From contig CM119376.1 in the NCBI GenBank assembly GCA_051294905.1, positions 22,382,001 to 22,446,000 of the forward strand: a stretch of 64,000 nucleotides of DNA, read 5' to 3'. The notes below the pieces were generated by a model, which worked only from the letters and a program-made list of their open reading frames with translations, made no database searches and was not told the DNA's origin. Both the position numbers and the translations under genes were made by a program. Shown in pieces: positions 1,432-61,190 of the stretch; the stretch's first letter is position 1; every line of letters begins with the position of its first letter. The stretch comes from Botryllus schlosseri. Its lineage: Eukaryota.

Positions 1432-3590
1432 TTACGATCGTTTGATATGGGTACGACTAATTGGGTTTGCTCTGAGAATGTTTTCAATATATTTGCATGT
1501 CATCTGCTGAGTTTTATCAAGTGATATACCTTTCCCTGGATTCTCTAAGGTTCGCCTGATGACGTACGGCCATTCGCCTTTTTTCCTTCCATTGTTTCAC
1601 TTGCACTTCTTCGAGAGTGCTGTAAAACCTCTCTTTCCTGCTGTTCTTCCATCCTTGACCCAAGTACACTAACACCGTGCCGCGGTAACGTGCCAGCTGC
1701 TCCAAACTGGTGAAATTGCTGCAAATAAATGGAGCACTGAGAATGGCTGCCCTATTGAACACTTTGGAAAAGTGCACTATTTCATTATGCCAAGGATATC
1801 CCTGCAAACGGAGTCAATTTGGCTATGAAAGAGACACTTTTCGTTATTCTTGGGTTAATAGAAAATTATGTTTATTGTTCTGTGACCCGCATCTAGTACA
1901 TGGAGTGCTACACAAATATATTATGTATACGTGCATAGCAGTTTTGTGTTAACTAATCTGAATGCTTGTAAATTTGCACGAAGTAGCCTATACCACGTGA
2001 ACCTCTCAGACCCCATTACAGTGTGTCGTGCTATTTTCAATAAGGGCTCACATATATATTTGAAATATATCATTAGGAGAAGACGGCAATAACAGAATAG
2101 GTTACAAAGGGAATAGAATTATATTGCTATCGCTGATCAAGAAAAGATATCATAATATAGGCTACATATGTAGGCTACACATATTAAACGCCAGTCCATG
2201 CCGTGTTACATGGTAGGTTAAGGAGAATTAGCCTACTCTATGATCGGATAATCGGATTAATCGGAATCTTTATCGGAATGGGATGCGGCGGGTTATCGTA
2301 TGAAAATATTGATAACGTTTGAAATGACTTTAAGGAACTCGATATCGAAGTATTTCTATTGGGGTTAATGCGAACAAGAGGTAGGCTAGACATCGAACTT
2401 TACTCTACTTGACGATGCTGATCACAGTCTGCTTACTCCCCATGGAGTCGAATTTTCGAAACTGAAAAAAAAAACAGCGAGGAACTGTTGAGTCGAAGGA
2501 CAGGGATACGCACTACGCACTGCTCAGTGTTCAAGTGGTCACTGCTCACACCTTGTCATTATGCGGTCCGTTCGAAATGATCTATACCTACACCACATCA
2601 CCCAAATCTACTCTGAGATATTGGGTGGATTGGATCCACCGTGAAAATTTCACTGGGTTTTTATAGCAAACCCCAGTTTGTGGAGCCCGGACTTAGCCAT
2701 TGTAGCTCGGTAGGTATATATGTCAAGACATGGAGATTCAAATGTTCAGCCTATATACCGTGCATCTACAGACGATGTATACATAGAAAATTTGGCACGA
2801 ACCGTGACAATGAAAGATATTACCTTCTGTATGGTGTAATTTCCGATCTGGGTGTTGCTTTTTCCTTTAAACCCTGTCCACGAGTGCGTACGTCTCCACC
2901 ACCGATTTGATGAGCCTGATCCAGATGTCTTTTACCGGACATTTTATGTTGCTCCCCGGATACCAAGCTGCGGTGCTTAGTATCAGGACAGTAGCTAGAG
3001 AAGGAGGGGTCTCTGTGCTTGAGATCGCGGTCGATTATTTGATGTTGGGACGCTCTGTAGGGAGACGATAATTTAGCTCTCGCTATTATATGAGTGTCTT
3101 TTTCATTCTGCTTCCACGTTTGGATTTTATCCCCTGACAGCACTTGTCTCGATAATAAATTCGCCTTCGTGGAGTGATTAACGGTTCGTGGAATCGAATA
3201 TTCCCGATAGGCATCGTTGTTTCGGTCCAGTATTCTTGTCTGTGAGCCCGCTTTGTGTGGAGAGGGTTTGGGCTTCGATATCGATGACGCTGGTGAAGTT
3301 TCGCCACGAATTTCAAAACTATCAGCTTTCCTGATATTCCTCCCGGAAAATTTATCGACCTGATGGGAATTATCGGCTACATGCGGTTCTCGATCTAGCG
3401 TCATTCGAGGCCTATCTTTTATAGGCAATCGATGTTGCTTGTTTCTGGAATTCTTCGGTGTACTTCGAAAATCCGGGTGACCATTCACAGGATGATCGCC
3501 GTTTATTTTTCTGGTCGGTTTTGTTATAGCTGGGAGAAATGAAGTCGAATTGTCTTTATTCCAATTGCCAGAAATGACCCCGCTTGTCAT
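1432..3590 (-). CDS. Putative uncharacterised multi-exon protein-coding gene (low-complexity S/K/R/P-rich N-terminal exon plus a basic C-terminal domain)
   Basis: The 256-codon ORF ends on a strong donor AG|GTAATA (2824/2823). Phase-consistent chain: exon 3590-2824, optional 36-nt exon 2587-2552, 25-nt microexon 2461-2437 (T10-CAG acceptor, GA|GTAAGC donor), exon 1801-1530, 58-bp intron, exon 1471-1432 (TAA). I recognise no family, and the 5' end is uncertain. Confidence 0.5.
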
Positions 3591-11200: not shown

Positions 11201-13386
11201 TACCAGTTTTCGAAAGCCGACATTTTCGTATACAATTCTTGCTTTCGTGTAAATAAAGTCCCAGATCCTTTTTAATGCTAATCGAACAATGATCTCACTG
11301 TGCCAATAAACGAGCAACGCTTCCGCGGTTAGAATTTCTCGGATTTATCGTTAAACCGTCATTAAGTGATTGTGCGGGTGTATTAACACCGGAGTTGTGA
11401 GAAAATGGTTCATTATATGCGAATACTGTTTGAACTTGTAATCCATGTTTTAAATATGTATAAATTGTATATATATACTTCTGCAGAGATCCGACAGATT
11501 TATGACCGTCCGTTGCTTTGATAAGAGGCATTGCATATATCCGGTTTTCAAGTAATTCCTTCTGTATGGCCTAGTCGTGAATTGAAAACAATGTAATTCT
11601 CCGCTATTTTTAAGAAGCTCAAGTGCGCCATTTTGTAGATGTCTAGAATTATTGTTAAAATTTCTACAGGCGACCGGTGCCGTCAGCTACCACGTGGCAC
11701 GTGCCGACAAAACTTTGCAGAATAAGCATGTAGCGATTTTTTACCCAGCTACTAGTCAGCCAACAGTTTCATAATATTCAACAACGTCTAGAATTACTAC
11801 AGGCCAGCAAAAGTTTGCAGGAGAATAACATCTAAAAGATTTGTACCTAGCTTGTAGCCAGCCATCAGTTTTATGACAATAAAATCTACTAATAACACGC
11901 TAAACTATCAGCGATGATGATAGAAAAATCCACGGGATATCACAGGATGACATTATTGAGTAGGCTAATACATTAGCAAATCTTCAGAGGACTGCGCGAC
12001 ATCTCACATCATTGGATTTGTCTGCGTCTGTGGCGTTTCCGCACCTGCGCTCATTTCACAGCACACATCGTTATTCACCCACTTAATGCCCTGCTCAGTT
12101 CTCACATTCTATCTGGGCTTCCGAAAACAATGTTATTACCCAGCTTGGGTGGATATGAACCTGCAACACCTAGCATATTCCAATTATGGCCGGTGATGAA
12201 AAAAACTAGATGACAAGCGTCACCTCAAACTACAATAAAAATAATAATACTAAAATAAATATACTTATGGACGCATAGTATCAATACGTCACGGTCTGCA
12301 TATGTTGTCTCGATTTATCGTCATAGCGTTTGTCCACAAATTTAGGCGCGACCCATTGTCGCTTATATCTGACTTCATGTATCAGGGGGACAGAAGATCC
12401 ACAAAAGGGCGGCAATCGATTTCTTGTCGCAAAGCAATTTCATATTTCAAATCGAGTGAAGTTATAATCTTTGAGACTTCAAACTTGAGCAAACATGCGT
12501 ATTGCATGTTGATCATCAAACAATCAAAGCCAAATAACTGTTGGACGAGTGCGCAGGAACAATAATTTGCTTGATGAAGCCTATGATTTCGTCAGTATTA
12601 CTGTGATATTTCTGTGAAAGGTGATTCCCGAGCTAAATTGGGAGTCGTCCTAATAAAAAGCTGAAACGCTAATTACACCGGCGTTGTCATTGCTACCGCG
12701 TTTTATCGTGTTAATTTTGTACTAATACCTGTAGATTTTAGGAAACCGTGGGTCAATTTTGTAATTGGTGATGGTATATGAGACAATTGATAGAGGCGGG
12801 TATTGAACAATCGTAATTTGTGTCCGATCTCCTTTGCAAGCACAATCGTTCGCGATTGACTGTCTGGTTGAAACATTGTACGCGCGTGACACTGACTATA
12901 ATTGCGAGTCAATGGGCTGCTAGTGACACCTTTATCATGATTCAGCAACTGCAAAAAATACAGCTAAACTGTCTCGCATGTATCATACGCATCACCATTA
13001 GGACAGTGAGTCATTTTGAAAATTCGATACTAAAATCAGTATAGCCTTGTGCGGCGCACGCATATTTTTCAATATTAGATTCTTCCGATTACTAAAATCG
13101 AACACTTCAATTCATCGCGTAAATATCACAAAACACAGGGGCGCGTATCAATACGGACCGACAACGAACATTGATACAAAAATATAGTTTTTCGAAAAAT
13201 CCCACTATTTGGATCCACGACTGTTCGGTATCTCCGTCGCTTATTGAGGCCATTGGCAGCGACGCTCTTCCATCAGTACTGTATCGTGTTATTCTTCTGA
13301 TCTGCCTCAATCTTGTCAGTCCACGAATCCTGACCTTTTCGGACGCAGCTCTCAACTCACAGACCCACTCATCGTGCTGTCGAGGC

Positions 13387-14001
13387 TTAGCTGTCCCTTC
13401 CACATTTGATGTTAAGATAGATACCGCTAGCAATGAGATATCCATGTAGCTCATTGCAGAGCCTCGACAGTTCTCTTTGCAGTTTGATCTTAATCAGCCT
13501 GCTATGAGAATTGGTGAATCTTAGATTCGAAGTACGCAAAATGTCAATTTCTGGCAGTGGCAGGTCCATTGTTTCCGACCTAACACGAAATCCGGCCGGA
13601 ATCTCGACTTCATTGTTCATCCTTAGGTGGTATGGTTCGATTGGCGGCAAATTCGCATGCTCAACTCGGACAGCGAACGCCTCATTTATAGTATTAACAA
13701 CTTCGCGTTCGATTTCCTCCCGGATATTCCCATCTCTTTCGATTACTCGAGCCTGGAAATTTTCTTTCAGCTTCTTGACAAGTAAACGCAATTTTGCGAC
13801 TTGTGTCTTCAGGTCTCTCCGCCCTCTGTTGACATGCCACTGCGCACCGGATTGGCGTCTGTAAACCAGAAGGGAAAGTATGTTTAGGTTCATCTCCATC
13901 ACGATATCTGTTGTAACTCTCTCTTACTTTCTGATGGCATGACCACTGAGTGTAGAAATGCAAACAGCAAGTATCACGTAGCGCGCGACAAACGTCTTCA
14001 T
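13387..14001 (-). CDS. Putative secreted prohormone/neuropeptide-precursor-like protein, 181 aa, 2 exons
   Basis: Exon 1 (14001-13928) reads MKTFVARYVILAVCISTLSGHAIR, a signal-peptide-like sequence, and ends at donor AA|GTAAGA. A 69-bp intron ends in ...TTCTGGTTTACAG|. Exon 2 (13858-13387) is in the frame of the 171-aa ORF and the phases match (2/2). RKR and RGRR basic sites follow the signal peptide. TATAAAT lies upstream. Confidence 0.7.
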
Positions 14002-14090
14002 GGCTTGAAGGTTGTTAAAGGCTTATTGATTCTTGTTGTCACTCTAACTGATCACACTCACGTTGATATCGAGCAATTCGAAAATTTCGA

Positions 14091-14097
14091 ATTTATA
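14091..14097 (-). promoter_or_regulatory. Candidate TATA box of the secreted-precursor gene
   Basis: TATAAAT on the - strand about 90 nt upstream of the ATG at 14001, with a possible initiator (TCAAC) about 33 nt downstream. Confidence 0.5.
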
Positions 14098-22701: not shown

Positions 22702-23910
22702 TCACAATTCGGTATGACCTGGTTTTTGTTGACTGGCCAAATACTCAGGCAATCGGTCAGCCGCACAGCGGAATCCAAGATTTGACGCAGAACTGTCCGG
22801 AGTGTTCTGGCTGCGTGCCGCACATCTATAACGGTAACAGTATTCTCTGTGACACATGTAGGAGCCGCCTTTTTTCACTTTATCCTTGCCGGTATTGGGA
22901 CCTTTGGGGTTAGTCACTGCGTCAGGGCTGTGATGAATCGTCCACCAGTCCTGCACCCATTCCCATACGTTGCCGACAGTGTTGTAAAGGCCGTATTTGT
23001 TTGGTTCATAGGATTTCACAGGGGCTGTAGCACTGTATCCGTCTTCTTCGGTATTTGTCTTCGGGAACTCACCTTGCCATATATTCAATCGTTGCTGATC
23101 TTTGGGATTTTGTTTGTTACCCCATGGGAAAAGTCTGTTGTGTAAGCCACCACGGGCTGCTTTTTCCCATTCTGCTTCAGTAGGGAGTCTTTTACCAGCC
23201 CATTTGCAATACTCAGTTGCATCGTTCCACGAAACATGAACCACAGGGTGATCCAATCTTTCTGCGACATCAGAGTCTGCTCCTTCGGGATGCTTCCATA
23301 ACGCATTGTTGACTGGTAGCCACCACGGTGCCTGCGCTACAGCTTGAGTTATACCCTTCTTTGTCTTTTCGCTAATGAAATTATCAAGAACAAACGAATT
23401 ACCAAATTTTTCCGCTTCTGTTTTGTAACCTGTCTGGTCAATGAACGTCTTGAATTGTGCATTGCTTACTTCCGTCTCATCAATGTAGTAATTTTCCAGG
23501 GTCACTTGTCGAACGGGGCCCTCTCCGTCGGCTGGTAATATATTGTCCGCTGAACCCATTTGAAAATTTCCGGCAGGTATCAAGACCATGGTTGAAGTAC
23601 TCTGTGCTTCTGGAGATTCAGGAGACGTTTCAATGACAGATTGATCAGTGACATCTACATCCCTCTTCGCGCGATTGAGACTACTACATCCACAGTCTTT
23701 CGGTTCCTGTTCCTGACCCGTTGCTGAATTACCAGAGCCGGCACTGGTTTCACCCGTGTCCTTATTTCCTAGATCGTCTGCATTCGTACCCGAGTTGGTA
23801 CTGGTGTCACCAGAGTCCTTAGTAGCTACCTCCTCGGCATTCGCAAGTGCTGAATCCGTATATATGATTAATACAACAAGGATAGCCAAGTGTCCTACAC
23901 GTAAACCCAT
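22702..23910 (-). CDS. SUMF1: Formylglycine-generating enzyme (sulfatase-modifying factor 1), single coding exon
   Basis: Uninterrupted ORF, open from 23940; the likely start is the Met at 23910 that precedes the signal peptide. It carries the CGC motif, the FGE core ([49 protein letters not shown]) and the catalytic segment [37 protein letters not shown]. It ends in HTEL. Confidence 0.97.
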
Positions 23911-25313
23911 GATGACGGTAATTCCACGCATGATTTCCACAATCGACTCGTATCTCTAAAGTTACGACAGCTTTTGCGTAATTGACGAGTACGACGCATT
24001 CGACGATGACAACGGCAAACGTAGGAGCAACTCGGCCGATGCGACGCGAAAGACGGACGCAGATGCAGTATTTGTGACAGAAAAAACACGGCAGAAATCA
24101 CATCGTCGAACCGAAGCAAGATAATAATGTGTTGATTTTGTTGGTCGTGTTGGTGCCTTGCATCTCTAATCTGTGATTGAGATTACTGTACCACATCGAC
24201 TTCCCCTTTTTCCGACACATGCAACTTTATTTTAATTTTTGTCCTGTTTTATGCCATATCTTCTGTCATAACATTCCTCATTTACTTTCTTTTATCAATA
24301 CTGGTGTACCTGACTGCTTTGCAGGAATGCCGCAAAATGTTGCTGCAATCGTAATCGCAAGGGGGCGTTGCAGTCACCGATGGCTATGCACAATTGCACA
24401 TTTCACAGTGCAGTTTGGCGCGTAGCATAGGTGGGATAAATAGGTGCTCGCGTAGTTATGAGTCTTATGACTATAGTTAAATTTAGTTGCGAGGTCGGCA
24501 GCCAACCAGTCCATACATCTGCCAGAGATCTCCATCCTCAAGATTACCGGGCCACGACTGACCTATCGATCTCGCTTCCCATAACATGCCGCCCTAGTTC
24601 TTGTCGCTTTCTTTTTGTATACTATCTTCTTTACTTTCATTCAGTGTGCATGCCTCCTCTTTACATCGCCTAGGCCAAGGTGGGTGTCAGATTCCATAGA
24701 CTACTCCTTGTCGCTTCGACATCTTCCTGTCTTTTCATTGTATCGCATTTTTTGTGGTGTATTGAACTGATAAAATTGCTAATAAACCAATGATGATGAT
24801 GATGATATTTAGTCATCGAAAATTTGACCTGTTTGTTGTCGAACAAGGTCGCCAAGGGTATTAAATCATCAGTATAAGTAAGCCACGATTTTTTTTGACA
24901 TAGTTTTTAGAGTTAAGATAACTTTTAGAGCCTGGGTGAGGTCAATTCATTCTTATCAGCCTATTCTACTTTAAGAAGCGTGCTGTTCTCATTTTAAAAT
25001 GAATGGTGGTGGTATCAAGCGCCGAAGAAGAATTTCAAATAGTATCCCAAGCAAGGTCAAGTTCTTTATTTTTGTCTGCAAAATCGTGGTGCTTTGACGA
25101 TGGAGATACGAAGGAAGCGTGAGGTTATCGAGTGACCTTCACCTAGTCTTATCCCTGTGTTTCCTGGAACTTGTATTTTGTATACTCTCTCGCCAAATTT
25201 TGGAAACCGTGTTTTTCTTCATCCCTACACATACCAATACAAAAATTGATTTAATTGTCACATTGCCATGTTTGTTCATTCCTTGTATACTATATTTTTA
25301 GCAGAAATCCATC

Positions 25314-41449: not shown

Positions 41450-41627
41450 AACGTGAACCTCTCAATTCTGAGGTTCACACACAGAACGCGAACATGAACC
41501 TCACGTTCACACCATCCCTAGTAATAGGCCTTATGTCAATACCTTATTATCACGCGGCACCTTTGAGCATATCAATTGACACCCTGTTTGAGAACCCCTG
41601 GTATACATACGGCTTCACTGATGTCGC

Positions 41628-41709
41628 GCTGTGATGGCCGAGTGGTTAAGGCGTTGGACTTGAAATCCAATGGGATATTCCCGCGCAGGTTCGAACCCTG
41701 CTCGCAGCG
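41628..41709 (+). tRNA. tRNA-Ser (anticodon TGA), intronless
   Basis: 82-nt cloverleaf: acceptor GCTGTGA/TCGCAGC, D-loop TGGCCGAGTGGTTAAGG, anticodon stem TTGGA-CT TGA AA-TCCAA (anticodon 41661-41663), long variable arm and T-loop GGTTCGAACCC. A T5 Pol III terminator follows at 41713-41717. Confidence 0.97.
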
Positions 41710-41766
41710 AAGTTTTTATCCGAGTATTTCAATATTATTTTGAAATTGCTTATTGCCATTCGTGTA

Positions 41767-53600: not shown

Positions 53601-54051
53601 GATTCCTATAATACAAACAGTTTTGGTTATCGCGTCTGTGGGGTTGGTAGATAATGAGCTGTTATGATCTTCAATTAGGGCAGAACGAGATGCAGAACAG
53701 GGCTAGATAAACCCGTGTCACGCGTGTTCGTAAATTTAGATAAGAGCGAAAAAACACAGGGTGCCACCATTCCGGAACATGTTTTCCGCGGTAAGCAACA
53801 GCGGTCGGTAGTCATCAAATTTTCCAATTAGCTTACTTTGATTTTTGCGATTGAACATATCAGTCGTGCGATCGGATGAGAGAAGTACAGCATTCAAATT
53901 AGAAACAGGAGGATATCAATATCACCACTTTTATTGCATTGAAAACATTCATATTTGCGTATGGTGCGTATCGCAGATTTCTTTACGAAAATACTATTCT
54001 ACTCATAGTTGCGAGCGAGTAAAGAGGTTCGAACTCTGCATATGCAGTAAC

Positions 54052-57000
54052 ATGCTATCGAGCCCAAACAATTCGACTCCGTTTTCCGTAAAAGACATTT
54101 TGAACCTGGAGAGTCAACGTCAACAAGTGGAAGCAGGATTTCTCGTTAACGATCACCACCCGTCGAGTCGCAGGTCAATATCTCACGAAACTTTGCCTCA
54201 AGGAACTATCGAATCAAGTTACGAATATCCCGGGGGAGAAAGGGGTTTTCGCTACGGTAACGGCGCTCCTGGGTCCCCGCTGACTTCATTAGATTGCAAT
54301 ATGGCGTCCTCTGGATTCTCGAAATCGGTTGGAGACGAGCCAAGTTACGCGTACATGGGACCGATGCCACCCCACGAATATGGTTCGGCTCCCATTCCCC
54401 CAACGAGCAATATACGGCATCATTCGCCAATGAGCAATAGTCAATATTACGGACCAGACAAAAACGCGAACATTTACAGACAGAGTGAACCGAGATCAAT
54501 TGAGGAATCCGGAAGAAAACACGGCGACGGGTCAGAAAGGGCTAGCTCTGCCCACTCGGATGGATTCAGCTACACTACTATTACCTCTAATCCAGGGAGT
54601 GTCCCGATGGCGCCAACTGGTTTGAATGGTTCGGGTTTTATGTCGTCGCCAAATTCAACTACTGGCGGCTATCTGAACGAATACGGCTATTCGACTTCGT
54701 ACAGTTCTCCTTCCGGCCAACTACAAGACCCGTCATATCCATACAGTCACCACCAGGCAACTTACCCGCCGACCGACAACGCTACAACTCTCCCAAGACA
54801 TCACTCCCCCAACAGTCATCAGTATGCCTCCTTGCCCTACTCTCAACCGCACCAACAAACTTGCGTCCCCGCCGTCCAGAATGGGTCCTCTCCCCAACCA
54901 ACACATTTTTATCCACGCGGAGGCCCCGCATCGGAAGCTGGGAGTGAAGAACTCATAGACCCCAGCGGTCCAGGTGACATGGCCGATACAGCGAATAATT
55001 TCCCAAGCAGTCAGCCGTTCCCTCGGTCCGGCGTGGACAGAGACAACGCGGACAGCAACGGACTCTATCACGTCAATGAATCTATGCATGCGCGGACGGA
55101 TGTTTCGCAGTTCAATGCAAGCAAGTCGCCGGAATCGCAGAACAAATTGACGGAATCTGATGCCACCCCTGATGATGTGAGCATTCACATGGAAGGTAAA
55201 TCAGTTTTTAATTCCACTTTGCTATCTTGTTATTGGACTGCTAGTGATCGTGAACCGAGTAAACAAATAAATACAGATATAGCTCGTATTAACTCATCAA
55301 ATCCTCCGACCGATAATCGTCACGAGGTCAAATTAATGACAACGATCATGGAATCCCTGCATGATTAGTATAGGAGTCTTCAAGCGTTTCATGGTTTTGC
55401 GATGAATTAGAAACAATTTTCCTTTATTATAAATACTTCTAGGTGACACGAACTTCGGATTCGATTCTAGTCTACAGCACACGCGGTTACACGTCCACAA
55501 AGTTTAACTCTTCATAATGTTTCGCATTGATCCGGATAGGATTTTGTAGTTTGGGTCACGAGTTAACACTTTCCCTGTCGCCTTCAAATCGATCTTCGTG
55601 AATGTACAGTAGAAGTATGCTCCCGACGACAAATTAAGTGAACATTATGCCGACTAAATAAGATCACCGGTCACACTTGGCTAAATTGTTGAAGCCAGAA
55701 GTACAGCCTCCCGAATGTAATATATAAAGTAAATTCAACGCTTGTTTCTCAACGGTTTGCATTAGTGCAGATTCATGTCGACGTATCTTCATTATATTAA
55801 TTCTAAACTGTGTCGCGTCATTTCGCAGTAATATAAACGGATGTTTTTGCGGCAATGAAATTGCCGGCACTACAGTGAATTTCACTAACCAACGACGCAT
55901 ATACCTACCGCATATAGATAATATCTGTAACTGAAACTATATGCGCGCGAGCGCAGGAGTCACCTTGTAAGTAAAGTTAATCCAGTAGCTGTAAGAAATA
56001 GATTTAGTAAATTAACATCAATAACGTATTACATTTCGTTATTCCATAATTAATGAATTCACCGTGCCGATGAATTGGGTTTCTTCGTTCCGTTTGGTCA
56101 TCAAGCGTCTGATTCATCGTTTATAGCCGATGAAATGCTACAATTTTCGTCACAACTCCGCCCGTAATAATTTGACGTATTTGAGAAAAGAATAACTTGT
56201 TTATAATCATGACATATTGACCTTAAAGACCATGTTGCACTCGCGCTTAATCTAACCTGTTCGCGACAGTCGAGCTCTTTTGAAATGTGCGATATGGCAT
56301 CGATCGAATCGAGTTATCTGACTTTATCTAGAAGGCGAATTTTCGCGGCCCAAGTTTCGTGGGAAAATTGGGATTGCTGTAATCGATGGCAGATGAATAC
56401 CCGTTGATTACTCTTGAGTGAAACTGGTAGTTGGTCTTGTCTAATTTGTTTCATTATCATTCCTTACAAATGGACTTATCACCTCCCTTGTTATTAGTCT
56501 CCTAGTGTTCTGTAGATTTGGAAAATCAAAATATGATTGATGTCGTTGTTTAGCAATGGATTTTGATAACGCGAAAGGTGACTGAATCAGAGGGTGACGT
56601 TTTTGAAAGTCGCCATTGTGGCATAACGGATCGGATTCATAAAATTCCAATAAATTTGTCTAATACGTAGACACATAAACATCGAGTAGCAACTATCATC
56701 GTATAATTGGATGGAGCGTTTATTGATGAAATGCGGAGCGTCAGTGGTATGCGGTGTTCAAAATGTATATAATCCAAAAGTGCCGAATATTTCGTCTCTT
56801 CCGATAGCGTATTTGAATATTACCGTGACACACCAAATTATTCGTGTCCATGACATATTTCACGGACTGATAGCCTTTTTTTGTCACCAGCGCAAGCAAT
56901 CTACCGCTTCTCGATTCGATGAATTAACCAAAAATTGCAAACCTCGTTATTGAAATTCGCTAACCAGGCATTCCGACGTGGCCATGAGTCTTCACGTCTA

Positions 57001-60000: not shown

Positions 60001-61190
60001 CACGTCTCGCGGAGGAGGATATGAATCAACCCGGGTGATTAATCATGTAGGTTGATCCGACAAGTTTACGTTTTGTTCGGTGGCTCGTTTGCTGCGTCAA
60101 GTCGGTGACAACATAGTTTACGACTCCGTCTTCTGCATCGCTGGTGTATAGTTTCGAAATGATATTCTCTCTCATCGGGATTCCGAATTTCCGTTCCTCG
60201 TTATTCCGCAGCGCGCGATAAAGCAGAACTGCGTCGCCTTTCGTATGTGTGACCTCGCAGTGTCATCAGCACTGCTACAAAGATCGGTTGCATAAACCAT
60301 CGACCGCATATTATCAAAGTCGCGTTATAGCTAGACGGCGGTTATGCTGCGCCAGCCGAATTTCATCTGGTCGCAAAATTTTAATCCACGACATAACAGC
60401 ATTACGTTTTCATTTAGAATCGGAGAAACTAGACAACGTCAGCAATTCCAGTGGAAGTCCCGAGGACGATGACAAAAAGAAACCAGAGGAAGACCCGTCG
60501 AAGAGCAGACAGCGCACGAGGCGCAAACCACGCGTTCTGTTTTCCCAGGCTCAGGTTTTCGAGCTGGAAAGGCGGTTCAAGCAGCAGCGGTATTTATCCG
60601 CTCCCGAGCGGGAGCACCTGGCTCAGTTACTCACACTTACCTCCACTCAAGTCAAGATTTGGTTTCAAAATCGACGGTACAAGTGCAAACGCCAAAGGCA
60701 AGACAAAACACTAGAGTTAGCCAGCGCTTGTCCCCCTCGCAAGGTACACGTGCCCGTTCTTATCAGAGACGGTCAACCATGCCTCCCCAGTCCTACGGGA
60801 TCCATACCAGGTGGGCACCCGTCACTGCAAGCGTCTTACTCCGCGCCGTACAATGTTACAGTTTCTCCTTATCACAGCTATCCGAGCTCTTACACTTCGT
60901 GCGGTTATAATACTTACCACCCCAACAGCAACACGTACTCACACAACGCCGCGGCCGCGGCGGCTGCCGCCGCTTACGGTAGCGCCGCCACTGCCGGGTA
61001 CAATCCGTTGTCGGCTCCGCCAATGGGCTCCGGGATGAGCGCAGTGGGCGGAATCGCTGGCTCCACACTCCACCATCAATCAGCAGTAAGGCCGACAACT
61101 TTCGCTACAATGCAGGGGCAAATGCAACAGCAACCGATCCGAAACCACTCGACCACCGACTATATGTATAAGTTTGGCCTGTGCACATGA
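54052..61190 (+). CDS. NK4: NK4 (tinman / NKX2-3/2-5/2-6 class) homeobox transcription factor, 638 aa, 2 exons
   Basis: Exon 1 (54052-55195) begins [20 protein letters not shown] (TN/eh1 motif) and ends at donor G|GTAAAT. Exon 2 (60418-61190) follows acceptor TTTCATTTAG| and the phases match. It encodes the homeodomain with NK2-class Tyr54 followed by QDKTLEL, the NK2-[20 protein letters not shown], and Tyr-rich and poly-Ala tracts. Additional small exons in the 5.2-kb intron cannot be excluded. Confidence 0.95.
60519..60698 (+). other. Homeobox of NK4
   Basis: [60 protein letters not shown]. Confidence 0.98.

What the first reader, a model, noticed from the sequence alone, without database searches (positions are those of the whole stretch)
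13387..14097. Hidden two-exon gene encoding an unrecognised prohormone-like secreted protein
Seen: splicing a 69-bp GT-AG intron joins a signal-peptide exon missed by the ORF track to the 171-aa ORF. The product is MKTFVARYVILAVCISTLSG-HAIRKR-QSGAQWHVNR-G-RR-DLKTQVAKLRLLVKKLKENFQ...RLCNELHGYLIASGIYLNIKCGRDS*, with a TATA box upstream. Known: KR/RR are prohormone-convertase sites, Gly before a dibasic site is the PAM amidation donor, and N-terminal Gln cyclises to pyroglutamate. Inference A: processing releases a doubly blocked decapeptide pQSGAQWHVNR-NH2, which matches no tunicate peptide family I know (not GnRH, cionin, tachykinin, calcitonin or vasopressin-like). Inference B (weak): counted from the last Arg of RKR, the 34 residues align without gaps to human PTH(1-34) at S3, Q6, N10, G12, basic 13, N33 and F34. 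They lack E4, L7 and H9, so this could be a divergent PTH-family ligand or chance. The helical C-terminal region with two Cys could be a second product. This is the best candidate for a new signalling system in the window.
Basis: partly seen in the sequence, partly recalled or inferred. Interest (0 to 1): 0.78.

Follow-up and report, generated by a model that had tools for sequence, protein, structure and literature searches.

The report
Unannotated fast-evolving sea-squirt secreted protein gene

Summary

Coding rests on one homologue, P0001 (161 aa, E 4e-9 against 1.84 billion proteins, about 28-30% identity over the full length). It comes from another ascidian sample.
- **Kept in P0001:** both cysteines, the C-terminus, the core domain (18/44 identical) and the basic site (RGRR here, RRRR there).
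- **Not kept:** the Gln start, the Gly amidation donor and the decapeptide sequence (2/11 identical).

The PTH likeness is chance. There is no Pfam or PDB match, 94% of shuffled copies reach six identities in some register, and the homologue keeps one of the six.

The protein matches no known family or fold, and the AlphaFold models are poor (pLDDT 47-50).

Best reading: an ascidian-restricted, fast-evolving secreted proprotein. A furin-type cut would release a roughly 142-aa domain carrying a C-terminal 19-residue disulfide loop. Function is unknown. Interest is modest.

The parts
14092..14097 (-). TATAAA, a possible TATA box about 91 nt upstream of the ATG
   Evidence: Read directly from the sequence. 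Function not tested.
13928..14001 (-). Exon 1 coding part (74 nt): Met1 to the first two bases of the Lys25 codon. Residues 1-19/20 look like a signal peptide.
   Evidence: Basic n-region, hydrophobic core YVILAVCISTL, c-region SG. Inferred by inspection; no SignalP or RNA evidence.
13859..13927 (-). Putative 69-nt phase-2 intron, GTAAGA...polypyrimidine...TTTACAG
   Evidence: Removing it joins the two frames exactly. Unspliced, the frame stops at a TAA inside the donor.
13387..13858 (-). Exon 2 (472 nt): last base of the Lys25 codon through Ser181, plus stop TAA at 13389..13387
   Evidence: Homologous over its full length to P0001.
13822..13854 (-).
   Evidence: Present as described. Only 2/11 identical to the homologue, which lacks both the Gln and the Gly.
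13816..13827 (-). R36-G-R-R39, a furin-type R-X-R-R site. Predicted cleavage is before Asp40.
   Evidence: RGRR here, RRRR at the aligned position in P0001. Cleavage itself is inferred.
13390..13815 (-). Predicted mature chain Asp40-Ser181 (142 aa). Predicted helices, variable middle loop, long C-terminal helix and a short terminal strand.
   Evidence: This is the conserved part: core 18/44 and C-terminal part 12/37 identical. Secondary structure comes from low-confidence AlphaFold models.
13402..13458 (-). Cys159 (13458..13456) to Cys177 (13404..13402), a 19-residue loop that probably forms a disulfide
   Evidence: Both Cys and their spacing are identical in P0001: C-x17-C, ending IKC just before the stop. 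The disulfide is inferred.

Best explanation
This is an unannotated two-exon gene of a styelid sea squirt; an earlier scan note names the genome Botryllus schlosseri. It encodes a 181-aa pre-pro-protein.

Inferred steps: the N-terminal 19-20 residues direct it into the ER and are removed. A furin-type convertase then cuts after R36-G-R-R39, and perhaps also after R24-K-R26. That discards a short, poorly conserved pro-segment. The product is a 142-aa domain (Asp40-Ser181) with an N-terminal helical hairpin, a variable middle loop, and a long C-terminal helix tied to the last strand by a Cys159-Cys177 disulfide.

Shown: the conserved mature domain is the part selection has kept. The family evolves fast and is so far seen only in ascidians. 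It belongs to no recognised protein family or fold.

Guess only: the role is most likely that of an extracellular ligand or binding protein.
For: - All sequence features are present and in phase.
- An exhaustive HMMER search of 1.84 billion representatives found one true relative, P0001 (E 4.1e-9). Pairwise BLASTP gives E 9e-19, 28% identity over 151 columns.
- P0001 has the same length class, both Cys with identical spacing, and a stop 2 residues after the last Cys against 4 here.
- P0001's ORF also runs upstream of the aligned ...RR junction, as the window's ORF does through its intron.
- P0001 comes from Logan sample SRR25569784, which also gives the best match to the window's neighbouring SUMF1 gene (65% overall, and visibly higher, by eye roughly 80%, over the catalytic region). 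It is therefore another ascidian and not a contaminant.
- The basic site is kept: RGRR here, RRRR there. The flanked peptide is not kept: 2/11 identical, against 18/44 in the core.
- No repeats surround the gene, there are no other copies in the window, and no relatives turned up in viral or metagenome contigs. It is not an obvious mobile-element ORF.
Against:
- The signal peptide was judged by eye only.
- No canonical polyadenylation signal lies within 1 kb.
- There is only one homologue, its DNA could not be fetched, and its first exon is unknown.
- It could be a paralogue and not the orthologue.
- Structure prediction is poor (pLDDT 47 and 50), so the fold and the disulfide are inferred.
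- Furin cleavage is inferred from a motif.
- No functional clue was found in any library.
Confidence: 0.6

Rival explanations
1. Neuropeptide precursor. Prohormone convertases cut at KR26 and RR39, PAM uses Gly37, and the released pQSGAQWHVNR-NH2 is a bioactive peptide. The C-terminal domain would then be an associated peptide, like GAP or neurophysin.
For: In this genome the motif is textbook: KR-Q...G-RR directly behind a signal-peptide-like start. In the homologue the aligned segment also appears to lie between basic residues...R|NSHSTAESGIHS|RRRR.
Against: The homologue lacks the Gln and the Gly and shares 2/11 residues in the peptide. The C-terminal domain is the conserved part. In known neuropeptide precursors the mature peptide is normally the best-kept segment (general knowledge). 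R-G-R-R and R-R-R-R fit the furin R-X-[KR]-R rule of constitutively secreted proproteins. There are no expression or peptidomic data.
Confidence: 0.08
2. Divergent PTH-family ligand. The 34 residues from Arg26 would correspond to PTH(1-34).
For: There are six ungapped identities with human PTH(1-34), at positions 3, 6, 10, 12, 33 and 34. At that one fixed register p is about 0.017. PTHR-like receptor genes exist in urochordates and PTH-like peptides have been predicted there (review PMC4354418).
Against: - Pfam, which holds the Parathyroid family to my knowledge, gave no match at E<=10, and no PDB chain matched the 34-mer.
- 94% of shuffled copies reach six identities in some register, and another register in the real protein also gives six.
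- The homologue keeps only position 3.
- The residues I know to matter for PTH1R binding and activation (Val2, Ile5, Met8, Arg20, Trp23, Leu24, Leu28; my own knowledge) are all different.
- The conserved RGRR site lies at positions 11-14 of the supposed hormone.
Confidence: 0.01
3. Not a working gene in this genome. Exon 2 would be a silent relic of a once-functional gene and the signal-peptide exon a chance ORF.
For: There is no transcript evidence, no canonical poly(A) signal, and ORFs of this length arise by chance in 40% of simulated windows. The protein is absent from every library, although the control shows that this species is not in those libraries at all.
Against: The frame is intact over 156 codons although it is only 28% identical to its relative, which implies long-maintained constraint in both lineages. 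A start codon, a signal-like sequence, consensus splice sites in the right phase and a TATA box all sit within 240 nt upstream.
Confidence: 0.15
4. The gene is real but has a different structure: another 5' exon (or SL trans-splicing at the 13858 acceptor), or further 3' exons, so that the 181-aa product is wrong.
For: An earlier report on this genome (s1-278701) found that a similar 'hidden small secreted precursor' was only the front of a longer gene. The splice is untested.
Against: The homologue ends within 2 residues of the same C-terminal Cys. Residues 13-79 of exon 2 are conserved at protein level but have no in-frame ATG before residue 80, so an upstream coding exon is needed. The nearest one supplies a signal peptide in the right phase.
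Confidence: 0.12

Closest known systems
Furin-processed constitutively secreted proproteins with short pro-segments (for example proalbumin, pro-PTH, pro-factor IX; my own knowledge)
   Same: Signal peptide, then a short basic pro-segment ending in R-X-[KR]-R, then a folded mature chain. The cleavage motif is conserved while the pro-segment sequence is not.
   Different: The mature domain has no detectable relation to any of them or to any Pfam or PDB entry. Cleavage is not demonstrated.
Neuropeptide precursors with an N-terminal amidated peptide and a larger associated domain (GnRH-GAP, vasopressin-neurophysin; my own knowledge)
   Same: Layout in this genome: signal, dibasic site, 10-residue Gln-initiated peptide, Gly-Arg-Arg, then a C-terminal domain.
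   Different: The peptide is the least conserved part, and its Gln and Gly are missing in the homologue. There is no sequence likeness to GnRH or vasopressin. Six extra residues (HAIRKR) lie between the signal peptide and the peptide.
Parathyroid hormone family
   Same: Six scattered identities with PTH(1-34) in one ungapped register, and a basic amphipathic helix after the site.
   Different: No profile match. The identities are at chance level and not conserved. There is an internal furin site. The product is a 142-aa disulfide-bonded domain, not a Cys-free hormone.
P0001, an unnamed 161-aa ORF from Logan assembly SRR25569784 (another ascidian)
   Same: The only true relative found. It shows full-length collinearity, a conserved RV[IV]E..G.I.E..ER.V...I..A block, LPP...YH..M, N..SRL, the LC-x17-C loop ending IKC, and a tetrabasic site at the same place.
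   Different: 28-30% identity. It has 9- and 3-residue deletions in the middle loop, an acidic and not a basic first helix, and no Gln or Gly around the spacer peptide. Its first 16 residues are probably intron read-through of the ORF call.

Membership tests
Parathyroid hormone family (PTH/PTHrP/TIP39) | Sequence match to the family profile or to solved PTH peptides | tested here: not met
   Pfam scan of exon 2 at E<=10 found 0 families. phmmer of the 34-mer against all PDB chains at E<=10 found 0.
Parathyroid hormone family (PTH/PTHrP/TIP39) | Similarity above chance and kept in relatives | tested here: not met
   6/34 identities. 94% of shuffles reach that in some register. The homologue keeps 1 of the 6.
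Parathyroid hormone family (PTH/PTHrP/TIP39) | Intact 1-34 pharmacophore with no processing site inside it | tested here: not met
   The conserved R-G-R-R occupies positions 11-14. Key residues 2, 5, 8, 20, 23, 24 and 28 differ (alignment; their importance is from my own knowledge).
Amidated neuropeptide precursor | Signal peptide | tested here: inconclusive
   n-, h- and c-regions are present by inspection and hydropathy. No SignalP was available, and exon 1 is not confirmed by RNA.
Amidated neuropeptide precursor | Peptide flanked by dibasic sites, with Gly as amide donor | tested here: met
   KR-QSGAQWHVNR-G-RR in this genome.
Amidated neuropeptide precursor | The mature peptide and its Gly/Gln features are conserved among relatives, more so than the rest of the precursor | tested here: not met
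   Spacer 2/11 identical, with no Gln and no Gly in P0001. Core 18/44 and C-terminal part 12/37. There is only one relative, so this is not final.
Amidated neuropeptide precursor | Expression in neurons or endocrine cells and detection of the peptide | not testable with these tools
No peptidomics data.
Furin-type processed secreted proprotein | R-X-[K/R]-R motif at the pro/mature boundary, conserved in relatives | tested here: met
   RGRR|D in the window, RRRR|L at the aligned columns in P0001.
Furin-type processed secreted proprotein | Actual cleavage and secretion | not testable with these tools
   Needs expression and N-terminal sequencing or mass spectrometry.
BPI/LBP/CETP (TULIP) lipid-binding fold (a lead from the ESM Atlas only) | Profile or fold match, reproducible with the homologue | tested here: not met
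   Atlas score was only 0.65. P0001 gave unrelated hits instead, DDE transposase fragments. There is no Pfam match and no Foldseek match, but the model is of low confidence.

The most novel reading that the evidence does not exclude
The conserved 142-aa domain, with its C-terminal 19-residue disulfide loop, founds a new ascidian-only family of secreted signalling proteins (cytokine- or hormone-like) with an undescribed fold. It would be released by furin, evolve fast because it co-evolves with a receptor, and in this species might also yield a lineage-specific amidated peptide.
Probability: 0.15. Interest if true: 0.5.

Novelty: new member of a known kind. Interest (0 to 1): 0.25.

Why it matters
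The result adds a probably real, unannotated gene to a sea-squirt genome and defines a small orphan family, currently two members, of fast-evolving secreted proteins with a conserved furin-type site and a conserved disulfide loop. Taxon-restricted secreted proteins are common and their roles are usually unknown, so this is a modest annotation gain. The more exciting claims do not hold: a new doubly blocked neuropeptide, or a tunicate PTH ligand that would give the orphan urochordate PTHR-like receptors a partner. Both fail the conservation and significance tests that could be run here.

Tried and rejected
2. Word-index protein searches with exon 2 alone and with the two-sequence profile found nothing beyond P0001.
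3. P0002, the second hit of the exhaustive search, is a 2322-aa bacterial repeat protein (Flg_new, beta-helix) matched on 39 residues. This is a chance hit.
4. The DNA of the P0001 contig could not be fetched because the sample file is too large. Its first exon, its splice site, synteny and dN/dS therefore could not be examined.
5. Pfam gave no family for the window protein or for P0001. A profile search against PDB sequences gave nothing.
6. AlphaFold2 gave pLDDT 46.6 on the single sequence and 50.3 with the two-row alignment. Foldseek against PDB, AFDB clusters and the ESM Atlas gave no hit better than E 0.6 or TM 0.4. With such models this says little about the fold.
7. ESM Atlas feature search: a weak BPI/LBP lead (0.65) for the window protein was not reproduced with P0001, so I dropped it.
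8. Scans of metagenome and viral contigs with the profile found no relatives.
9. Mobile-element or tandem-family origin: no repeats in 9-19 kb and no second copy in the window.
10. As a control for the absence of a self-hit, I searched the neighbouring SUMF1 ORF. Its best hits are only 65-72% identical. The window's species is therefore not in the protein collections, and the absence says nothing about expression.
11. A search for the run accession in papers found nothing.

Full report
**What is in the sequence.** On the minus strand an ATG at 14001 opens a 74-nt coding stretch, MKTFVARYVILAVCISTLSGHAIR plus two bases of a Lys codon. It runs into GTAAGA at 13927. Sixty-nine bases further on, a pyrimidine-rich tract ends in TTTACAG at 13859. 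The base at 13858 completes the Lys codon and the frame then runs to a TAA at 13389..13387. The spliced CDS is 546 nt, giving 181 aa. Left unspliced, the upstream frame stops at once at a TAA inside the donor. TATAAA lies at 14097..14092. The N-terminus has the usual three parts of a signal peptide: basic K2 and R7, an 11-residue hydrophobic core, and a small-residue end.

Two weaknesses remain. No AATAAA or ATTAAA occurs within 1 kb downstream of the stop, only AATAAC at +96 and AATAAG at +144. And an ORF of 171 codons or more arises in 40% of Markov-simulated windows of this composition. ORF length alone therefore proves nothing.

**Is it coding?** Pfam gave nothing, and the word-indexed search of 5.8 billion proteins gave nothing. 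The exhaustive HMMER search of 1.84 billion cluster representatives gave two hits. P0002 is a 2322-aa bacterial repeat protein matched over 39 residues, which is a chance hit. P0001 is a 161-aa unnamed ORF with E 4.1e-9 for the whole library. Pairwise BLASTP gives E 9e-19 and 28% identity over 151 columns, covering residues 2-152 of the 156-residue query.

The alignment keeps several blocks:
- RV[IV]E..G.I.E..ER.V...I..A
- LPP...YH..M
- N..SRL
- both cysteines with identical spacing (LC-x17-C, ending IKC)

P0001 stops two residues after the last Cys, against four here. Like the window's 171-aa ORF, P0001 continues upstream of the aligned "...RR" junction into non-signal-like sequence. That is what an ORF caller produces when it reads through an intron at the same place.

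P0001 sits on a 6.5-kb contig of Logan sample SRR25569784, whose DNA could not be delivered. The same sample also holds the best match (P0003) to the SUMF1 gene that lies 9 kb from the candidate in the window. That match is 65% identical overall and visibly higher, by eye roughly 80%, across the catalytic region. The best named hit is Styela clava at 72%. The relative therefore comes from another stolidobranch-type ascidian. An earlier scan note calls this window's genome Botryllus schlosseri, which fits.

The same control shows that the window's own species is missing from the protein collections, since there is no SUMF1 hit above 72%. The lack of a self-hit for the candidate therefore says nothing about its expression.

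A frame kept open over 156 codons at 28% identity, while a housekeeping enzyme between the same two species is far better conserved, indicates a real but fast-evolving gene.

Segment by segment, window against P0001:

| Segment (exon-2 numbering) | Identical residues |
|---|---|
| Spacer peptide QSGAQWHVNRG | 2/11 |
| Basic site plus first helix | 6/24 |
| Core, residues 37-80 | 18/44 |
| Middle loop | 4/23, plus 12 gapped positions |
| C-terminal part, 116-152 | 12/37 |

With one homologue, possibly a paralogue, this is not final, but it points clearly that way.

**The PTH idea.** For that single register p is about 0.017. However, another register in the same protein also gives six, and 94% of shuffled copies reach six in some register. 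The homologue in the same register has three identities, of which only position 3 is shared. Pfam found no match even at E<=10, and the 34-mer matched no PDB chain at E<=10. The residues known to carry PTH activity and receptor binding are all different, and the conserved furin site would cut the supposed hormone after position 14. A review (PMC4354418) notes that PTHR-like genes exist in urochordates and that PTH-like peptides have been predicted there. The question is a fair one, but this gene is not the answer.

**What the mature domain is.** I could not place it. A profile search against PDB sequences found nothing. AlphaFold2 gave pLDDT 46.6 alone and 50.3 with the two-row alignment. Both models suggest two N-terminal helices, a poorly defined middle region of about 55 residues, a long C-terminal helix carrying the first Cys, and a final short strand carrying the second. 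Foldseek against PDB, AFDB clusters and the ESM Atlas returned nothing better than E 0.6 or TM 0.4, which with such models is uninformative. An ESM-feature lead to BPI/LBP-type proteins (score 0.65) was not reproduced with the homologue. There are no relatives in viral or metagenome contigs, no repeats around the gene, and no second copy in the window. Nothing therefore suggests a mobile-element origin.

**Most likely mechanism.** Shown: an in-phase two-exon reading, a conserved coding second exon, a conserved basic site, and a conserved Cys pair and C-terminus. Inferred: the protein enters the secretory pathway through the exon-1 signal peptide. A furin-type convertase removes the pro-segment, about 19-20 residues, at RGRR39. 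The secreted product is the 142-aa Asp40-Ser181 domain, stabilised by a Cys159-Cys177 loop. Its role as an extracellular ligand or binding protein is a guess based on size, secretion and fast evolution.

I give this reading 0.6. The alternatives are:
- silent relic: 0.15
- a different exon structure: 0.12
- the neuropeptide reading: 0.08
- the PTH reading: 0.01

**Verdict.** The claim that made it exciting, a new signalling peptide or a PTH-like hormone, is not supported. Interest is modest.

Noticed in passing
window 22702..23940 (-): A single uninterrupted 412-aa ORF for formylglycine-generating enzyme (SUMF1, PF03781), ending in HTEL. Relative to its ascidian relatives it carries an extra acidic, Ser/Thr/Gly-rich segment after the signal peptide. 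Best hits are 72% to Styela clava and 65% to an unnamed Logan protein from SRR25569784.
   Followed up: partly
window 41627..41710 (+): tRNA-Ser (anticodon TGA), found by both ARAGORN and Rfam.
   Followed up: no
window 60249..61190 (+): A 313-aa ORF holding a homeodomain (PF00046, E 4.8e-20), probably an exon of a homeobox gene.
   Followed up: no
window 53845..55368 (+): A 507-aa ORF, the longest in the window, with no Pfam family. It lies in a locally GC-richer stretch (0.46).
   Followed up: no
window 2820..3590 (-): A 256-aa ORF rich in basic and Ser/Pro residues, with no Pfam family.
   Followed up: no
window 13107..13454 (-) and 13511..13864 (+): Two ORFs of 115 and 117 aa overlap the candidate's exon 2, one in another frame and one on the other strand. 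They are most likely by-products of the coding region's composition.
   Followed up: no
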